Below, in pieces: positions 19,167 through 33,340 of a stretch of DNA of 34,968 nucleotides. The DNA is from Octopus bimaculoides (taxonomy: Eukaryota). Where the stretch lies: assembly GCF_001194135.2 (NCBI RefSeq), contig NC_068982.1, positions 63,259,810 to 63,294,777 on the forward strand, written 5' to 3'. The notes under the pieces are model-generated. The model was not told the DNA's origin. It worked only from the letters and a program-made list of their open reading frames with translations, and searched no databases. A program made the position numbers and the translations under genes. How positions within the stretch are numbered: position 1 is the stretch's first letter; each line of letters starts with the position of its first letter.

Positions 19167-19329
19167 TGAGTGGCTGTGTGGTAAATAGCTTGCTTACCAA
19201 TTGCATGGTTCTGGGTTCAGTCCCACTGCGTGTCACCTTGGGCAAGTGTCTTCCACTATAGCTTCGGGCCGACCAAAGCCTTGTGAGTGGATTTGGTAGA
19301 CGGAAACTGAGAGAAGCCCGTCGTATATG

Positions 19330-19380
<51 letters not shown>

Positions 19381-19595
19381 GTGTGTGTATATTTCTTTGT
19401 GTCTGTGTTTGTCCCCCCAACATCGCTTGACAACCGATGCTGGTGTGTTTACGTCCCCGTAACCTAGCGGTTCGGCAAAAGAGACCGATAGAATAAGTAA
19501 TAGGCTTACAAAGAATAAGTCCTGGAGTTGATTTGCTCGTCTAAAGGCGGTGCTCTAGCATGGCCACAGTCAAATGACTGAAACAAGTATAAGAG
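19167..19595 (+). mobile_element. Family B tRNA-derived CORE-type SINE, near full length, with internal microsatellite and 7-bp TSD
   Basis: A box tggctgtgtggtaa (19171), B box gggttcagtccc (19213), CORE-like caccttgggcaagtgtctt (19235), internal (TA)n(TATG)n at about 19324-19390, tail aagtataagagtataa. TATAACA lies at 19160-19166 and 19596-19602. Confidence 0.92.
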
Positions 19596-20441
19596 TATAA
19601 CACGGACACTTTTTCTAATCACCAGCTTTGCTAAGAATAGGAAGCAAAACATTCCGAAGCCACAAAAATTAACTCTAGATTTTCACAGGCATGGCTGGAA
19701 ACACTAAGTGAAATAAAGATTGCGTCTTACATATGCAAAATTGCAAAGAGGAATGTCAGTTAACTTGATATCATGATTTCGAATTTAGCGCCAAAATATG
19801 TTTTTGATTCCCCTCAGCCAAGTCTACTAGTAACAAACTCATATATCACTTCAACCAATGCCTGTTTTCTTTTCAGTGCCCAAGCTGTACTTAGAAAAGT
19901 GAACTAAGCGAATACAATTTTTTTCTTAAATATATAAAGAACACTAATACACATGAGAGAAACAAATTATTTTTCATGTTTGTATATGTTATAAATTGCA
20001 TAGTCCAATTATACATTTTACAAGGTAATACAGATATTGAAAACTAGCTCATCAGATTTATAAAATATCATGGTTACATCGATTCTTCAACTCCAATATA
20101 CACATACAAAGAGCCATCTTCAAATATTAATTACAAGGACAATAACGAAATATATGCTTATAAATGAACAGTAATATTTAGAAATGCATATATACGCAAG
20201 CATCCATGCAGTTATGTAGTTAATCTTCCCTAGTTAAACAGGAAAAAAATCTTTAACAAGAAGAAAATTCCCATGCATAATTTCAAGCATGCCACGGATC
20301 AATGACTGTGTGATATGTCCTGAAATTGCAATAGATTTAGTGATTTATCAAACGTCGTTGTAGTCAGGAATGAAAACTTCAGCTGGTTTGCCCGGATGAT
20401 CTCTATTGCTTATGACTCAGGACACAAGACGTTTACACACA

Positions 20442-24576: not shown

Positions 24577-25617
24577 TCCTACATAACAATGGTATTAGTA
24601 ATTACACTTAAAGCTAGACTGCAAGTTTATAACGACATTAATAAAGAAGCCAGTATCATCACGGCTAGGTTAAAATTAGATTTTTTTTAAATAGTGATCG
24701 TTCCTATCTACAAGATAAGTTTTGATAATATAGAAAGTTTTTGTTTATTAGATGCTGCTATGATAGGCTCAAAGTTGGTCGTGGGTGAGTAGGATAGCCT
24801 TAAGGTAGATCTATTAAAAATAGAGTAATATTTATGTTGACAAAGGAAGTTGGAGTCAAGTATATTAAAAAAGGATTTAGCTAAGCTCTTAATATTTAGT
24901 GAGAAGGAAGGTGTACACCATAGAATAGAGCGTCTACCGCTTTTGTTTTTAGTTGCTTAAGAGTAGTGTTATCTATATTTTTAGAAATTAGAGGCGGGTA
25001 ATAGACCGGCTTTCTAATGTGCCCTACATATTTCAAACTACGTACACACCTTGTTGTTAGCTGTTTTAGTTTTTGACTTAGTGTTATATGTGTGCGTGTC
25101 GGGTCTAAGTTGTCTTAATCTGGGTTCTCCCGGGGTTCTAGTATTGTGTATGTGTGGTCTGTTGTGATTCTGGTGGTTGGCATGTCGTTGTGATATTATT
25201 TGAGATACATGTTGCTTAAGCCTAGTATTAGAGATGTATTTTATTTGTTGGGGGAAGCCATTGGCAGCGAGCGCTTTGTTGTAATATGGGGCGTGGTTAT
25301 TGAATATTTCCTCAGTGGATGAGAGGTCAGATATACGAATTGAGATACCCGTAACTATATATTCAAAGGTGGACTTGTGGTGATTAGAATTAATGTCTGT
25401 AGTGGTTAGGTTCATGATATGGAGAGTACTGGAAGGTTTCTAAGTTTAAAGTTACATCTAGAAAATTTGTGTGGCTTTGTGAGAAGTTTCAAAAGTAACA
25501 GATAGATTGAGGCTAGAGAAAAAAATGTGTAGATCTTTCCTAGTTCTTTCTAAAAGAGGCTTCATCTCTGCAGAGATCTCCCTTGATGTTAAGGAACATA
25601 TATTTTCCTACTAGTTC
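24577..25617 (-). pseudogene. Decayed Penelope-like retroelement (RT C-terminal half, linker and probable start of GIY-YIG)
   Basis: Minus-strand motifs in order: ELVGKYMFLNIKGDLCRDEA (25617-25558; cf. ELVG.Y...GLYRDDG); LERTRKDL; NFLDVTLNL (25467-25441); SNHHKSTFEYIVTGISIRISDLSSTEEIFNNHAPYYNKAL (ORF 25415-25038); RRSILWCTPSFSLNIK (about 24936-24885); IFNRSTLRLSYS (24821-24786); NVV...YVG (24639-24577, GIY-YIG-like, tentative). Confidence 0.88.
25002..25051. repeat. Copy 2 of the exact 50-bp direct repeat, inside the Penelope linker
   Basis: Identical to 23576-23625. Confidence 0.98.
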
Positions 25618-26354
25618 TCCTCTCAGAATTAGGTGTTAAGGCAGTTGTTTGTATTATAATTAATATTAAAACGAGATGTTATCTTAACAGTATTATCAGA
25701 GTCAGAATTACTTTTATTTAAAGAATCGAAATCTAGTTCAGGCAAACTATCATTAGAGTTAATTTCACTATTCACACTATCTATTCTACTCTTGTTTACA
25801 GATCTTAAAGTTGATTTTAATTATAGTGTAGCATGATACGAGAGATCCTGGCATAGAAAGTTAGTAATCTTCAAGCATGTACGCAGATAGTATAGATGGC
25901 AAAAGTTTAACAATATATTATAAAGAGAGATTGATACCCATCGTAATTTATACACGTCGTCGTATATCGAAGACAATGGAATTTTCGATAAGCTGACAGT
26001 TATTAATACAACTCAAGCTTTAGCAACTAAAACTACTAAATATGTGAATGAAAATCTGGGAATTTCATAGCCAAAAGGTATTTGTTATAAAAATATAACC
26101 CGTTTAGATAATCCTCAGGCCCGATTACCTTCCAGTTGTTTACATCGCCGCGTGGAGATAAGTAAATGATTAACAAGTGTAGTCACAGCAGAAATGTTAA
26201 GTTGGAAAAAAAATCAAATGTAAACAACACGAAGGTAATGCGACCTGGTTCTGTGTGTCCTACAAGTTATGCAGCAAATATTGTGTAGCAAGAAACATAT
26301 GTGGTTTTTATTTACCTTTTCCACTCTTTAATTTCTCGGATATTTATATCATTC

Positions 26355-26469
26355 TTATGTAAGGATGTTGCTGATAGTGACTTCGAAGTGTCGGTAAGTT
26401 AAGCCATCGTCGGACGATGGCTTAGTTGGCCGATACTTTGAAGTCACTGTCAACGACATTCTTGTATAA
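26355..26469 (+). other. 56-bp ungapped inverted repeat with 3-nt loop; candidate hairpin RNA or palindromic element
   Basis: Pairing i with 52824-i gives 44 Watson-Crick pairs, 10 G:U pairs and 2 mismatches on the + strand. The inverted repeat is certain; its function is not. Confidence 0.9.
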
Positions 26470-27146
26470 CAGTAATAAATTTACATTCTACAGAAGTAAA
26501 CCATCAGCTTAATGTAAAATCGCTTTTAATATAACTGAATATAAAAACAAGTATTAATGTGTGTGTGTGTGTGTGTGTGTGCGTGTGTGTGTGTGTGCGT
26601 GTGTGTGTGTGTGTGCGTGTGTGTGCATAGAGATGTCTGTATACATTATGAGGTGGTTGCATGTACAGGGTTGGACAAAATAATGGAAACACCTAGCATC
26701 ATAGCATTATAATTGAAATATCTATAAAACTGCTAAAAGTTTGTTTATTTTTGTTTTTTGATTTATTATTAGTGTTGCTTAATACGTGTTGCTAAAAGTG
26801 ATGTTTCTGTTCGGATATCATCAGAAAAAGGTAATTAAAATTCATTAAAATGACAGATCAATCGGACTTTCAAAAGGGTCAAATTGTCGGTGCTCGTAAG
26901 CAAGATGCTAGCGTAACGAAAACTGGCGAAATGTTTGGTGTATCAAGAAGTACTGTCTCAAAAGTAATGACAACCTTTGAGAAAGAGGGAAAAACTTCCT
27001 CGTCAAAACAAAACTTCGGAAGAAAACCAAAACTTTCTGATAGGGACGTCGGACTCTTAGGCAAATTGTTAGAAAGGATCACAAAAGTACAACTCCCAAA
27101 ATTACTGCAGAGCTTAATGTCCACCTCGAGAACCCAGTTTCTACAA

Positions 27147-27159
27147 AGATCGGAAGAGC
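27147..27159 (+). other. Illumina adapter read-through (AGATCGGAAGAGC) at the contig end
   Basis: Exact 13-mer of the universal TruSeq adapter start, immediately before the N gap, interrupting the transposase reading frame. Confidence 0.93.
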
Positions 27160-27598
27160 NNNNNNNNNNNNNNNNNNNNNNNNNNNNNNNNNNNNNNNNN
27201 NNNNNNNNNNNNNNNNNNNNNNNNNNNNNNNNNNNNNNNNNNNNNNNNNNNNNNNNNNNNNNNNNNNNNNNNNNNNNNNNNNNNNNNNNNNNNNNNNNNN
27301 NNNNNNNNNNNNNNNNNNNNNNNNNNNNNNNNNNNNNNNNNNNNNNNNNNNNNNNNNNNNNNNNNNNNNNNNNNNNNNNNNNNNNNNNNNNNNNNNNNNN
27401 NNNNNNNNNNNNNNNNNNNNNNNNNNNNNNNNNNNNNNNNNNNNNNNNNNNNNNNNNNNNNNNNNNNNNNNNNNNNNNNNNNNNNNNNNNNNNNNNNNNN
27501 NNNNNNNNNNNNNNNNNNNNNNNNNNNNNNNNNNNNNNNNNNNNNNNNNNNNNNNNNNNNNNNNNNNNNNNNNNNNNNNNNNNNNNNNNNNNNNNNNN
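27160..27598. other. Assembly gap (439 N) inside the Tc1 element
   Basis: N run. It would contain the first catalytic Asp (WSDE motif). Confidence 1.
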
Positions 27599-28988
27599 GC
27601 AAATCCGCCGGCCCACTGGTTTCCCTTCACGGCATAATTAATAGTCAAGACTATTTAAGCATTTTATCTGATCAAATTTATCCTATGGTTGCGAAACTGT
27701 TTCCGGAGAGAAACGCAGTCTTTCAGGATGATAATACACCAATTCACAGAGCTAAAGTTGTTACTGAATGGCACGAGGAACATTCTAGTGAAATTGAGCA
27801 TCTTATCTGGCCACCACAGTTCCCAGATCTCAATATTATTGAACATTTATAATGCATTTTAGAAAAACAAGTAAGGAGTCGATATCCTCCACCATCATCA
27901 CTCCAAAAACTGGAGACTGTTTTAGTTGAAGGATGGACAAAAATTCCTCTAGAAACAATTCAAACTTGTACGAATCCACACGTCGTAGAATTCAAGCTGT
28001 AATTACTGCCAAAAGCGGTCCTACCCCATATTAAAATAAATTCGTTTGAAATTTTAAGGTGTTTCCATTATTTTGTCCAAACCCTCTATGTATTTGTATG
28101 ATATCCTCGATCAATCAATCAACGTGACAATTCTCTCAAGAATTCGTTATATTTGAAATTATGTATATATGATGGTTTGCCCAGATTTCGACTGTTGAGT
28201 TGCTGTAGTTTTATGTGTAGTCTTAGTATCTTAGGTTAAAACAGTCAAACTGTTGTAATCCTCATTTAATATCCACTGGTTATACAACTTGAAACTACAT
28301 TTAGCTGTTATTGAAATATGTTTTAAATTAATGTAAACATTTTCCAATTTTGCAGCGTTTGAAATAGAATTTTGTATCAAATTATAAGAGAATGAAAGGA
28401 AGAGGATGATATTTGGCAGTATTGTGTAATATTTATAAGCAGTTATATTAATCATTAATAATATTAGAGAACATTCTATTTAAACAGTCTGGCAGCGGAA
28501 TTTGCTTACAAAAACACTTTTCCAGATTTAAATTTAATTACATATAGTGAAATGTATTCAAGATATTAAAAAGTGCAAGAAATAGAAAACTATTAAACGA
28601 TAGCTTTTAAAAACGGAACAAAACTCATAATTTCAAGAAATATTGTAACAGCTTGTTTGCTTAAATTGCAGTCGAAATCAGGTAATTGGCGGGATGCATT
28701 GTACTTAAAACTTATTCAAGAACATTTAATTTAAATACACGTGTGTCTATTTAATATAGATTAGAAAAAATGGTACGGAAAGACTCAGTTATATTAAATT
28801 AAGAAATTTAAATTTTAACTATTGGACAAAACTTTTATTTAACGCTTTCCACGGCAATACAAGACGAATATTATGAGTGCATTCCGTCTAAATGCAACGA
28901 TTTTGCATTTACTTCCATTCGAGAAATGTAGATACACACACACAAACATACATATATCAATGTATGTGCGAATATACAGTTGAATTTT

Positions 28989-29176: not shown

Positions 29177-29178
<2 letters not shown>
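28989..29178 (-). mobile_element. Family A SINE on the minus strand
   Basis: The reverse complement reads gcaagctagcagaatcgttaa...gagttcaaattctgc...cctttcggcgtcgataaaa...ctggggtcgatgaaatcgacttgcccc...tgtgccaaaattt, matching 16900-17295. Confidence 0.88.
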
Positions 29179-29275
<97 letters not shown>

Positions 29276-29325
29276 TACACATACACACACACACACGCAC
29301 GCACACACACGCATACACGCACGTA
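29178..29325. repeat. Long (AC)n microsatellite
   Basis: About 40 pure AC units plus an interrupted tail. Confidence 0.98.
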
Positions 29326-31627: not shown

Positions 31628-32153
31628 TGATTGGTTGAGGATGCTCACGTGGTCAGGTCAGGGAATTTTCGTTCAGTTTTAATGGATGTTGTGAAAATCT
31701 AGAAACAAATAATTACTTTTTATTCATTTTCAGCAATTTTCCTCTCGTAAGGGTTATGCACTCCAAGTACTTTATAGCTTAAAAGTAACATTTCTTTTTC
31801 AGCCGTTTTGACTAAACTTTGGTCAGATAAACCGAACCATTCACAAAATCAGTAACTATGACAAAAAATTGATACGCCTTGCCTAAATAAGATAATAACA
31901 CTATGTACAGCCACTGAGTACAACCAAAAGGTTAAAACAGCTCTAAATTTGCACGCCACTTCCAGTTGATATGTCATATGACAGATCAATAGGTTCATAG
32001 CTATTGATCTGTCATTTGACATATCTACTGGACGAAAGTTTTGACGTGACCTTCCCGCATGGTTATCACATGACCTGAGCATAGATAGCTACGGAAAACT
32101 TATCAAACATTTCCTTAGCAGAAATTCCCCACGTGACCATCCTCAACCAATTA
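31628..32153. repeat. Segment bounded by imperfect inverted repeats (about 32 bp) - possible non-autonomous DNA transposon
   Basis: Left 31628-31668 tgattggttgaggatgctcacgtgg[tcaggtcag]ggaattt versus the reverse complement of 32122-32153 taattggttgaggatggtcacgtggggaattt (2 substitutions, one 9-bp indel). Confidence 0.65.
31961..32032. other. 32-bp stem / 8-nt loop hairpin
   Basis: tccagttgatatgtcatatgacagatcaatag-gttcatag-ctattgatctgtcatttgacatatctactgga; 30/32 Watson-Crick pairs and 2 T:T mismatches. Confidence 0.92.
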
Positions 32154-32895
32154 ATCTGCACGTCATCTTATCTTCCACTGCGACTTTATCAAGAAATCTC
32201 AAACTTCCCCGATCGCAATCACCAAATGGCCTGAAGAGATGCGCATAGTGCGAATATGTGTGTGTGTGTGTGTTTGTGTGAGTGTGTGTGTGTGTGTGCG
32301 TGCGTGTGTGTGTGTTTGTGTGCATGTGTGTGGGGGGTTGTGTGTGTGTGCGTATGTGTGTACTTGAAAATGGTTTCTTGGTGTTAAGGCGTGTATTAGT
32401 CTGTTGCTGTCACTCAGTTATGATACCATCAGTTATTTTTTTATAGTCATGGGCCCATGTGCTGCGGACTGAATGTTAACGGGATCGTAGCACCGCTTTC
32501 AGAGCAGACTGCAGTTTGATGTATTTAACGACCGTGGTAGGAAAAGCAAGATCAGCGACGTTCTTTCTATTGATTGGCACTTAAAGTTAGTAGAATATTC
32601 TTAAGGTTGGTAGAGCATGCAGTTTCTTTCGGACAAAGAGATGACAATCAGTAGTTCCAGTTGAATAAGGAGGGATCCTTTCGAGGATATTTTATTTGTT
32701 ATATTGTGAAAGGAATACCAATGTTTCAGAGACTCCAGAGGAAGCGCAAAACAGAGACGGAGTTTTCTCTATCCCTGCACGTAAAGAAGTGTATGATCCA
32801 TGCGTTGTGTGTATCATCTCTTAAAGTTGTTGATTACTTCGCCGAAATTACTTCAATCATGACATTCAAAGGAATTACTTAATGAATATACATAC

Positions 32896-33340
32896 AGCGC
32901 CGGCGTGGTTGTTTGGTAAAAATTTTGTTTCTCAACATCATGGTTTGGGATTCAGTCCCACTGCATAGCGCCTTGGGCAAGATATCTTCTGCTGTAACCT
33001 CGAGTCGACCAAAACTTTGGGAGTGGATTTGGTAGACGGAAACTAAAAGAAGACCATCGTATACCTGTATATATATATATATATATATATGCGTGTGTGT
33101 ATTCGTGTCAGTGTTTGTCCATACATCCACCCCACTACTGCTTGATAACCAGTTTTGGTGTGTTTACATCCCGTAGCCTAGCGATTAGGCAAAAATGTAC
33201 GATAGAATAAGTACCACGCTTGAAAAAGAGAGAAGTATTAGGGTCGATACATTCCACAAAAATTCTTCAAGGCAGTGCCCCAGCATGGCCGCAGTGTAAT
33301 GACTGCAACAAGTAAAGTATAAAAGGTAACAGATAAAAGA
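32896..33340 (+). mobile_element. Family B CORE-type SINE, older near-full-length copy
   Basis: Collinear with 19167-19595: tggttgtttggtaa, gggattcagtccc, ccttgggcaag, gtggatttggtagacggaaact, internal (TA)n, gatagaataagtac, cagcatggccgcagt. Confidence 0.9.

What the first reader, a model, noticed from the sequence alone, without database searches (positions are those of the whole stretch)
26355..26469. 56-bp hairpin with strong one-strand G:U bias: candidate structured RNA (pri-miRNA/hpRNA) or fossil of an A-to-I-edited hairpin
Seen: an ungapped stem (i pairs with 52824-i, loop CGG at 26411-26413) with 44 Watson-Crick pairs, 10 G:T pairs, 1 A:C and 1 A:G on the + strand. The G:T differences are split 5/5 between the arms. 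A neutrally decaying DNA palindrome should gain G:T and A:C about equally on one strand; 10 versus 1 has a one-sided binomial p of 12/2048, about 0.006 (8 versus 1, p about 0.02, in the core 26361-26463, which limits post-hoc end selection). Inference: either + strand RNA pairing is under selection, or the copy derives from an ADAR-edited dsRNA (A:U to G:U) that was reverse-transcribed. Geometry is partly miRNA-like: a 5' cut at 26372 would leave an 11-bp basal stem and put UG (26358-26359) at -14/-13. Against this, there is no CNNC at about +17, and the apical 16-bp extension with a 3-nt loop is atypical. Established: coleoid cephalopods have expanded miRNA repertoires and extensive A-to-I editing. 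No part of this hairpin matches any transposon recognised in the window.
Basis: partly seen in the sequence, partly recalled or inferred. Interest (0 to 1): 0.75.

Follow-up and report, generated by a model that had tools for sequence, protein, structure and literature searches.

The report
Octopus palindromic hairpin with wobble bias
A 115-131 bp single-copy DNA palindrome in transposon-rich non-coding octopus DNA really does fold far better as + strand RNA because nearly all its arm differences are G:U wobbles, but it does not look like a microRNA gene, and such palindromes are common in octopus genomes, so it is most likely an ordinary inverted-repeat relic with an unexplained strand bias that rests on few sites.

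Summary
Positions 26355-26469 form an ungapped 56-bp stem with 44 Watson-Crick, 10 G:T, 1 A:C and 1 A:G pairs. RNA MFE is -73.8 kcal/mol on + and -50.7 on -. The symmetry is a DNA-level palindrome: it passes through the "loop" to one central base (26412) and extends to 26347/26477.

Ten G:T among 12 mismatches has P of about 1e-4 to 3e-3 under strand-symmetric neutral decay. It rests on only 12 sites. Neighbour-base tests for ADAR, APOBEC-like and CpG deamination are all non-significant.

It matches no Rfam family at gathering score and has no second copy in the window. The accessible collections, which hold almost no octopus DNA, also gave nothing.

The canonical pri-miRNA reading is disfavoured: the stem is 56-65 bp without a bulge, the loop is 3 nt and CNNC is absent.

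Shared repeats with an O. bimaculoides contig support an octopod origin. Published work reports that this genome is exceptionally rich in near-perfect inverted repeats, roughly one per window of this size.

Best reading (about 0.45): a neutral palindrome relic, either a fold-back duplication or a MITE-like element. Selection on + strand RNA pairing and strand-coordinated deamination (including an ADAR-edited retrocopy) remain open. The deciding data (genome copy number, orthologues, small-RNA and RNA-seq reads) were out of reach.

The parts
26355..26469 (+). Core hairpin: ungapped 56-bp stem (26355-26410 pairs with 26414-26469) with 44 WC, 10 G:T, 1 A:C and 1 A:G. The wobble pairs make the + strand transcript the better folder.
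26347..26477 (.). Full DNA palindrome: 65-nt arms 26347-26411 and 26413-26477, 77% complementary, no indel.
26411..26413 (.). Centre of symmetry. C26411 and G26413 are complementary, so only base 26412 is unpaired in the DNA symmetry. As RNA it is a 3-nt CGG loop.
26397..26427 (+). Apical 14-bp segment, separated from the lower stem by the single transversion mismatch A26396:G26428. Perfect except for the tandem wobble pairs G26398:T26426 and T26399:G26425.
26342..26346 (.). Left copy of a candidate 5-bp target-site duplication, ATTTA, next to the palindrome end. Not significant.
   Evidence: 13% of flank shuffles give a direct repeat of 5 bp or more
26479..26483 (.). Right copy of the candidate ATTTA duplication, if the element is taken as 26347-26478. 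Not significant.
26558..26625 (+). Context: (TG)34 microsatellite 88 nt downstream of the hairpin. It would be the 3' tail if the hairpin were part of a + strand retroposed unit. About 16 arrays of this type occur in the window, so the proximity may be coincidence.
26666..28086 (+). Context, not part of the hairpin: a Tc1/mariner copy with ~28-bp terminal inverted repeats and TA flanks. It carries an HTH_23 N-terminus and a DDE_3 catalytic domain, and is interrupted by an assembly gap at 27160-27598.

Best explanation
This is a DNA-level palindrome of 115-131 bp in transposon-rich, apparently non-coding DNA of an octopus genome. It most likely arose in one step as a perfect inverted duplication, either by fold-back or template-switch repair, or as a terminal-inverted-repeat-only (MITE-like, foldback) transposon remnant. 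It has since diverged by point substitutions only. It belongs to the very abundant class of near-perfect inverted repeats that make the octopus genome rich in potential dsRNA. If the + strand is transcribed, it would form a 56-65 bp intramolecular duplex. Such a duplex is a substrate for ADAR, and possibly Dicer, rather than for Drosha. It is not a canonical miRNA gene. On this reading the excess of G:T over A:C has no function and is a small-sample extreme.

Shown: the structure, the symmetry, the single copy in the sequence available, and the lack of any family match. Inferred: the origin by inverted duplication or transposon, and neutrality.
For: The symmetry passes through the loop to a single central base and continues into AT-rich flanks beyond the stable stem. 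There is not one bulge or indel in 65 paired positions. Both features are typical of a DNA duplication event and atypical of evolved RNA hairpins.

No Rfam family reaches threshold and no tRNA or Pol III-type head lies nearby. No exon-like ORFs appear in the window. The neighbours are a Tc1/mariner copy, an octopus-specific transposon fragment, SINE-like repeats and many microsatellites.

A second ungapped hairpin with a 32-bp stem lies 5.5 kb away, at 31961-32032. Porath 2017 reports 4.4e-3 of O. bimaculoides loci in near-perfect inverted repeats. That predicts about 150 nt of such structure per 35-kb window, so a hairpin here is the expected background.

Neighbour-base signatures of ADAR, APOBEC-like and CpG deamination are all absent.
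Against: Ten of 12 arm differences are the one class that keeps + strand RNA paired. P is 1e-4 to 3e-3 under strand-symmetric neutral decay, against only two or three comparable hairpins in the window. The flank shows no compositional skew. Only one transversion in 12 differences is also low (P = 0.02-0.06). CpG observed/expected is 1.41 against 0.76 for the window, which is weak evidence (P = 0.09). A chance explanation is therefore uncomfortable unless many windows were screened. No transposon hallmark was demonstrated either: the ATTTA duplication is not significant and no second copy was found.
Confidence: 0.45

Rival explanations
1. A + strand structured RNA under selection for pairing. 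The palindrome is transcribed and used as a long hairpin, for example an hpRNA-type endo-siRNA or non-canonical small-RNA precursor, or a dsRNA-binding or ADAR-recruiting element. Wobble-creating transitions are tolerated while A:C mismatches and transversions are purged.
For: 10 G:U against 1 A:C and 1 transversion mismatch, split 5/5 between the arms. The + strand is 23 kcal/mol more stable than the - strand. There are no indels and CpG is retained. The flank has no skew.
Against: There is no evidence of transcription, and no homologue or family was found. The palindromic loop and the complete absence of bulges point to a recent DNA event rather than a long-maintained RNA. To my knowledge hpRNA and endo-siRNA pathways have not been documented in cephalopods. 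The base rate of functional hairpins among roughly 1e5 genomic palindromes is very low.
Confidence: 0.2
2. A genomic fossil of A-to-I hyper-editing. A perfect A:U-rich hairpin RNA was edited by ADAR on both arms (A:U to I:U), then reverse-transcribed and inserted, fixing about ten A-to-G changes on the + strand.
For: The changes are transitions only, coordinated on one strand and present in both arms. Reverting G to A gives an ancestor of 34% GC, like the surrounding genome, whereas the C-to-T model gives 51%. O. bimaculoides shows the strongest hyper-editing among the metazoans surveyed (PMC5625713). A (TG)34 array lies 88 nt downstream on the same strand and could be a retroposon tail.
Against: The ADAR 5' neighbour rule is not detectable (5' G at 2/10 against 9/27, P = 0.69), and there is no 3' A enrichment (3/10 against 6/27). 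There is no poly(A) tail and no significant target-site duplication. No source copy or family is known. It would also require germ-line retroposition of an unrelated hairpin RNA.
Confidence: 0.1
3. Strand-coordinated DNA damage. During the break-repair or fold-back event that created the palindrome, or later replication stress at it, the + strand was exposed as single-stranded DNA. Its cytosines were deaminated (G:C to G:T), giving a one-off cluster of C-to-T changes.
For: The pattern is transition-only and confined to one strand. Palindromes are break-prone, and resection clusters are strand-coordinated (established knowledge, not tested here).
Against: The implied ancestor has 51% GC, well above any 2-kb stretch of the window (maximum 39%). 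There is no TpC or CpG context enrichment. About 10 of 27 cytosines would have to be hit without any change visible in the flanks, and the flanks cannot be polarised here.
Confidence: 0.1
4. A member of a multi-copy MITE or foldback transposon family, or the 3' module of a SINE or LINE, whose consensus is itself a palindrome. On this reading the bias is family history or chance. This overlaps the best explanation in origin but predicts many dispersed copies.
For: It is a short, AT-flanked, perfect-symmetry palindrome with a possible 5-bp ATTTA duplication. The neighbourhood is transposon-dense. Palindromic repeats account for heavy editing in another species, the frog (PMC5625713).
Against: No other copy or fragment was found in the 35-kb window, even at word size 7, or in 12.6 kb of O. 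bimaculoides DNA. The arms are unrelated to the neighbouring Tc1 terminal repeats. The duplication is not significant. This test has power only against families of several tens of thousands of copies.
Confidence: 0.1
5. A canonical Drosha/Dicer pri-miRNA, an octopus-specific novel miRNA.
For: The hairpin is strong and favours the + strand. UG lies at -14/-13 relative to one possible cut site. Coleoids have many novel miRNA families (PMC9699675).
Against: The stem is 56-65 bp where about 35 bp is usual. The loop is 3 nt where about 10 nt or more is usual. There are no bulges and no CNNC. Basal pairing continues past the junction that the UG argument needs. No Rfam miRNA family reaches threshold. 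No hairpin substring appears in the Zolotarov 2022 supplements, although these do not hold precursor sequences.
Confidence: 0.03

Closest known systems
Near-perfect inverted repeats that form hyper-edited dsRNA in Octopus bimaculoides (Porath et al. 2017, PMC5625713)
   Same: A short intramolecular inverted repeat in non-coding octopus DNA, able to form a long and nearly perfect RNA duplex. The abundance reported there predicts about one such structure per window of this size.
   Different: That class was defined at more than 95% arm identity, whereas this one is 79% Watson-Crick. Editing in that class is seen in RNA while the genome keeps A. Here the G's are in the DNA. Transcription of this locus is unknown.
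Palindromic MITE hairpins that became small-RNA precursors (human MADE1 / miR-548 family; own knowledge)
   Same: An 80-130 bp almost perfect palindrome made of two abutting inverted repeats with a minimal centre, lying among Tc1/mariner elements. Such a palindrome can be read through and folded into a hairpin RNA.
   Different: MADE1 has thousands of copies, TA duplications and terminal repeats homologous to Hsmar1. Here no second copy was found, there is no similarity to the adjacent Tc1 terminal repeats, and the duplication is ambiguous.
Drosophila hpRNA endo-siRNA loci (own knowledge)
   Same: An inverted-duplication origin, a long bulge-free stem, and wobble pairs tolerated on the transcribed strand.
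   Different: hpRNA stems usually run to hundreds of bp with sizeable loops, depend on Dicer-2/AGO2 and have identifiable target genes. None of this is known or testable here, and the pathway is not established in cephalopods.
Canonical animal pri-miRNA (MirGeneDB criteria; Zolotarov et al. 2022, PMC9699675, for octopus)
   Same: A strand-specific stable hairpin in a lineage with an expanded miRNA repertoire.
   Different: Stem length, loop size, lack of bulges, lack of CNNC, and no family match.
Editing footprints in retrocopies (APOBEC G-to-A and ADAR A-to-G clusters in mammalian retroelements; own knowledge)
   Same: A cluster of substitutions that are transition-only and coordinated on one strand.
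   Different: Those footprints are recognised by comparison with a family consensus within retroelements that carry insertion hallmarks.

Membership tests
Canonical pri-miRNA | Stem of about 35 bp (roughly three helical turns) between the basal and apical junctions | tested here: not met
   Ungapped stem of 56 bp, or 65 with the extension
Canonical pri-miRNA | Flexible apical loop of about 10 nt or more; imperfect stem with bulges | tested here: not met
   3-nt loop whose outer bases are complementary; no bulge; two 1x1 mismatches only
Canonical pri-miRNA | Processing motifs: basal UG, apical UGU/GUG, 3' CNNC | tested here: inconclusive
   UG lies at -14 only for a cut at 26372. CNNC is absent at 26470-26473. 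The loop CGG carries no UGU/GUG.
Canonical pri-miRNA | Match to a described miRNA family | tested here: not met
   Rfam 15 gives nothing at gathering score. The best hits are 26 bits against thresholds of 200 and 100.
Canonical pri-miRNA | Paired ~22-nt reads with 2-nt 3' overhangs and 5' homogeneity | not testable with these tools
   No small-RNA read data are accessible
MITE / foldback transposon | Terminal inverted repeats, small size, no coding capacity | tested here: met
   A 131-bp palindrome; only ORFs of 34 aa or less. This feature is trivially met by any palindrome.
MITE / foldback transposon | Target-site duplication flanking the ends | tested here: inconclusive
   ATTTA lies on both sides of 26347-26478, but 13% of flank shuffles do as well. 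A TA duplication cannot be told apart from the palindrome itself.
MITE / foldback transposon | Multiple dispersed copies; terminal repeats related to an autonomous element | tested here: inconclusive
   No copy in the window or in 12.6 kb of O. bimaculoides, and no similarity to the adjacent Tc1 terminal repeats.
ADAR-edited retrocopy | A-to-G cluster relative to a source copy or consensus | not testable with these tools
   No paralogue or orthologue is accessible. The direction of change cannot be polarised.
ADAR-edited retrocopy | ADAR neighbour preference (5' G depleted; in invertebrates 3' A favoured, PMC5625713) | tested here: inconclusive
   5' G at 2/10 against 9/27 (P = 0.69); 3' A at 3/10 against 6/27 (P = 0.68)
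ADAR-edited retrocopy | Retroposition hallmarks: 3' tail and target-site duplication | tested here: not met
   No poly(A) tail. There are an AATAAA at 26474-26479 and a (TG)34 array 88 nt downstream, but no bounded unit could be defined.
hpRNA / endo-siRNA locus | Transcribed long inverted repeat yielding 21-nt siRNAs with a target gene | not testable with these tools
   No expression data. A six-frame search of the hairpin against 5.8 billion proteins found nothing, so no coding-gene source for the arms was detected.

The most novel reading that the evidence does not exclude
The one-strand, transition-only divergence is a heritable imprint of an RNA-level process on an octopus hairpin. One form is an A-to-I hyper-edited hairpin transcript copied back into the germ line, which would be a route by which cephalopod editing writes into DNA. 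The other is a + strand hpRNA-type small-RNA locus kept paired by selection, a class not yet described in cephalopods.
Probability: 0.25. Interest if true: 0.7.

Novelty: new member of a known kind. Interest (0 to 1): 0.3.

Why it matters
If the bias is real biology, it would bear on two open questions in cephalopod genomics. The first is whether the massive A-to-I editing of dsRNA leaves any heritable trace in the genome. The second is whether coleoids possess long-hairpin (siRNA-type) small-RNA genes alongside their expanded miRNA set. A genome-wide census of G:T against A:C asymmetry in the roughly 1e5 octopus palindromes, oriented by transcription, would answer the first directly. This locus shows what the signal would look like. 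If the bias is chance, the locus is one more of the inverted repeats that make octopus transcripts rich in ADAR substrates and has no further interest.

Tried and rejected
(1) Rfam at gathering score on the whole window, and at E <= 10 on 26200-26650. Only sub-threshold generic long-hairpin miRNA models matched.

(2) Copies in the window. Arm and apex patterns with 3 mismatches, and blastn at word size 7, found only the self inverted repeat.

(3) Exact-ORF look-ups of the 34-aa ORF spanning the hairpin and of a neighbouring 125-aa ORF. Neither is on record.

(4) A six-frame concatenated translation of the hairpin against the 5.8-billion-protein collection. No hit at E <= 10.

(5) The degenerate arm pattern GAYAGTGACTTCRAAGTRTCGG in viral, prokaryotic-genome and metagenome contigs. 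The scans returned 0, 0 and 1. The single hit (L001) is a phage-like contig with no hairpin, which is the number expected by chance.

(6) The Tc1 transposase N-terminus as a handle to same-genome DNA. The best hits are 58-77% identical and come from other organisms. L004 shares only the Tc1 copy.

(7) The neighbouring transposon fragment as a handle. It gave one O. bimaculoides protein and a 12.6-kb contig. This supports an octopod origin but is too little DNA for a copy-number test.

(8) The Zolotarov 2022 supplements. They hold no hairpin substrings, and they also lack the let-7 sequence, so they contain no precursor or mature sequences. This is not a valid MirGeneDB test.

(9) A background G:T against A:C ratio from other inverted repeats in the window. 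The pooled count is only 2 against 2 mismatches, too few to serve as a baseline.

(10) ADAR, APOBEC-like (TpC) and CpG context tests. All are non-significant.

(11) A target-site duplication scan with a shuffle control. Not significant.

(12) tRNA or SINE head upstream. None found.

(13) Considered and rejected: an assembly fold-back artefact, because the arms differ at 21% of positions; local compositional skew, because the flank is balanced; and a parvovirus-like terminal hairpin, because no viral ORFs lie nearby.

Full report
OBSERVATION

The hairpin is real and lies at the stated coordinates. Pairing i with 52824-i over 26355-26410 gives 44 Watson-Crick pairs, 10 G:T, one A:C (C26371:A26453) and one A:G (A26396:G26428). 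In five of the wobble pairs the G sits in the left arm, and in five in the right.

- As RNA the + strand folds into a single uninterrupted stem at -73.8 kcal/mol (z = -15.5 against dinucleotide shuffles). The - strand reaches only -50.7 kcal/mol because every wobble becomes an A:C mismatch.
- DNA parameters give the same ordering, -34.7 against -26.7.
- One correction to the description. C26411 and G26413 are also complementary, so the sequence is an odd-length palindrome centred on the single base 26412.
- The symmetry continues, more weakly, to 26347/26477. These are 65-nt arms at 77% complementarity, with 49 WC, 11 G:T, 2 A:C and 2 other pairs.
- No indel occurs anywhere in the 65 positions.

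IS THE BIAS MORE THAN CHANCE?

- Two-sided binomial P values are 0.012 for 10 v 1, 0.039 for the core (8 v 1) and 0.022 for the extended palindrome (11 v 2).
- The near-absence of transversions adds information. Under strand-symmetric neutral decay, 10 or more of 12 mismatches falling in one wobble class on either strand has P = 1e-4 to 3e-3, for transition/transversion rate ratios of 2 to 6.
- One transversion or fewer in 12 has P = 0.02-0.06.
- The 355 bp upstream show no G+T excess (172 v 183), so local skew is not the cause.
- After masking simple repeats, only two other inverted repeats of note exist in the window, so the within-window multiplicity is small.

The pattern is therefore statistically unusual. 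It still rests on 12 sites, and I do not know how many windows the scan screened.

CONTEXT

The window is a gappy eukaryotic draft with nine runs of N. It is full of microsatellites (53 TRF rows) and has no convincing exon.

- About 200 bp downstream of the hairpin lies a Tc1/mariner copy at 26666-28086. It has ~28-bp terminal inverted repeats, TA flanks, and HTH_23 and DDE_3 domains.
- Upstream, at 24711-25550 on the - strand, lies a frame-shifted transposon fragment. Its only strong relative among 5.8 billion proteins is an Octopus bimaculoides protein (49% identity, E = 2e-56).
- The O. bimaculoides contig that encodes this protein shares three further repeat segments with the window at 80-90% nucleotide identity.
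- The repeat at 19200-19330 is, from my own knowledge, the abundant octopus SINE.

An octopod origin is thus supported, although the species was not proven.

THE HAIRPIN ITSELF

The hairpin matches nothing else in the window, including the Tc1 terminal repeats. It matches no Rfam family at gathering score. The E-value search gives only generic long-stem miRNA models at 26 bits against thresholds of 100-200. No tRNA-like head lies nearby.

BASE RATE

Porath et al. 2017 (PMC5625713) report that O. bimaculoides has the strongest hyper-editing signal among the metazoans they surveyed. They also report that 4.4e-3 of random 50-bp loci lie in near-perfect inverted repeats, an exceptionally high value. 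That fraction predicts about 150 nt of such structure in a 35-kb window. This agrees with what is seen: this hairpin plus a second one at 31961-32032. The second has a 32-bp stem, an 8-nt loop, two T:T mismatches and equal stability on both strands. A stable hairpin in octopus DNA is therefore ordinary. Only the strand bias is not.

WHAT IT IS NOT

A canonical pri-miRNA is disfavoured for five reasons.

- The stem is 56-65 bp rather than about 35 bp.
- The loop is 3 nt and is itself part of the DNA symmetry.
- There are no bulges.
- CNNC is absent.
- The UG-at-minus-14 argument needs the basal junction at 26361, although pairing runs on to 26355 and beyond.

The supplements of the octopus miRNA paper contain no substring of the hairpin. 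They also contain no miRNA sequences at all (let-7 is absent), so this is not a valid MirGeneDB test.

WHAT COULD EXPLAIN THE BIAS

Three explanations remain open.

(a) Chance on a neutral palindrome.

(b) Selection for + strand RNA pairing. Wobble-creating transitions are tolerated, and A:C mismatches and transversions are purged.

(c) A strand-coordinated deamination burst. This could be ADAR editing of the hairpin RNA followed by reverse transcription (A to G). It could instead be cytosine deamination of exposed + strand single-stranded DNA (C to T).

I could not polarise the changes, because no paralogue or orthologue is reachable. The indirect tests gave little.

- The 5' neighbour of the ten candidate edited sites is G in 2/10, against 9/27 for unedited A (P = 0.69). 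The 3' neighbour is A in 3/10 against 6/27. So the ADAR motif reported for invertebrates is neither seen nor excluded.
- TpC and CpG contexts are not enriched for the C-to-T model.
- Reverting G to A gives an ancestor of 34% GC, like the surrounding genome. Reverting T to C gives 51%, higher than any 2-kb stretch of the window. This favours the A-to-G direction only if the palindrome was made from local sequence.
- No poly(A) tail and no significant target-site duplication mark an insertion. ATTTA flanks 26347-26478, but 13% of shuffles match it.
- A (TG)34 array lies 88 nt downstream on the same strand and could be a retroposon tail. Such arrays occur about every 2 kb here.

WEIGHING

I took the neutral likelihood of the pattern as about 1e-3 and the likelihood under (b) or (c) as about 0.3-0.5. 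I took priors of a few per thousand for (b) and (c) among roughly 1e5 genomic palindromes. On those figures the three explanations come out at comparable posterior weight. Allowing for selection of the finding by the scan tips the balance towards chance. My estimates are:

- 0.45 for a neutral palindrome relic;
- 0.2 for a selected + strand RNA, with about 0.03 in addition for a canonical miRNA;
- 0.1 each for an ADAR-edited retrocopy, for single-strand C-to-T damage, and for a multi-copy transposon family.

All of these share the same origin: a one-step DNA inverted duplication or a terminal-repeat-only element.

LIMITS

No octopus genome, read data or MirGeneDB sequences could be searched. 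The three protein searches and the metagenome scan are spent. The copy-number test covers only 35 kb plus 12.6 kb, so it can exclude only families of several tens of thousands of copies. The decisive steps are all routine and are listed separately.

VERDICT

The miRNA reading is unlikely. The nature of the strand bias is unresolved. The locus is most simply a new example of a known and abundant kind of octopus inverted repeat. Interest is modest (0.3). There is a roughly one-in-four chance that it records an RNA-level process, which would be considerably more interesting.

Noticed in passing
window 31961-32032: A second ungapped hairpin: 32-bp stem, 8-nt loop, 30 WC plus two T:T mismatches, and no wobble pairs. 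It is equally stable on both strands (-46.4 and -46.7 kcal/mol, z about -10 and -9). By length it is closer to a pre-miRNA than the reported finding, and it served as a strand-symmetric comparator.
   Followed up: partly
window 26116-26247: A third inverted repeat lies 130 bp upstream of the finding: 30-nt arms (83% complementary) around a 72-nt spacer. Four of its five arm differences are transversions. It is possibly a small MITE-like unit, starting CAGG and ending CCTG.
   Followed up: no
window 26666-28086: A Tc1/mariner copy with ~28-bp terminal inverted repeats (CAGGGTTGGACAAAATAATGGAAACACC), TA flanks, an HTH_23 N-terminus and a DDE_3 domain. It is interrupted by an N gap at 27160-27598. 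Its closest protein relatives in the collection are only 58-77% identical and come from other animals (for example Oratosquilla) or unnamed ENA contigs.
   Followed up: partly
window 24711-25550 (- strand): A frame-shifted transposon-like coding fragment. Its only strong homologue is O. bimaculoides 'GATA zinc finger domain-containing protein 14-like, partial' (P0121, 49% identity, no Pfam domain). It appears to be an octopus-restricted repeat annotated as a gene.
   Followed up: partly
window 19200-19600, 32880-33160 and 1650-1826: SINE-like and other interspersed repeats. The segments at 19493-19600 and 1650-1826 are shared at 80-90% identity with O. bimaculoides contig LGKD02023778.1 (L002). 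The segment at 19200-19330 looks like the abundant octopus SINE (own recollection). ARAGORN calls no tRNA in the window.
   Followed up: partly
whole window: Microsatellite density is extreme: 53 TRF rows in 35 kb, with about 16 (CA/TG)n arrays. There are also nine assembly gaps. The (TG)34 array at 26558-26625 is complementary to the (CA)n array at 29178-29322, so the two could form a ~70-bp duplex across 2.6 kb.
   Followed up: no
L001 (JACCDL010449971.1) 58-79: The only metagenome match to the 22-nt arm pattern lies in a phage-like contig with no hairpin. It is a chance match at the expected rate.
   Followed up: yes
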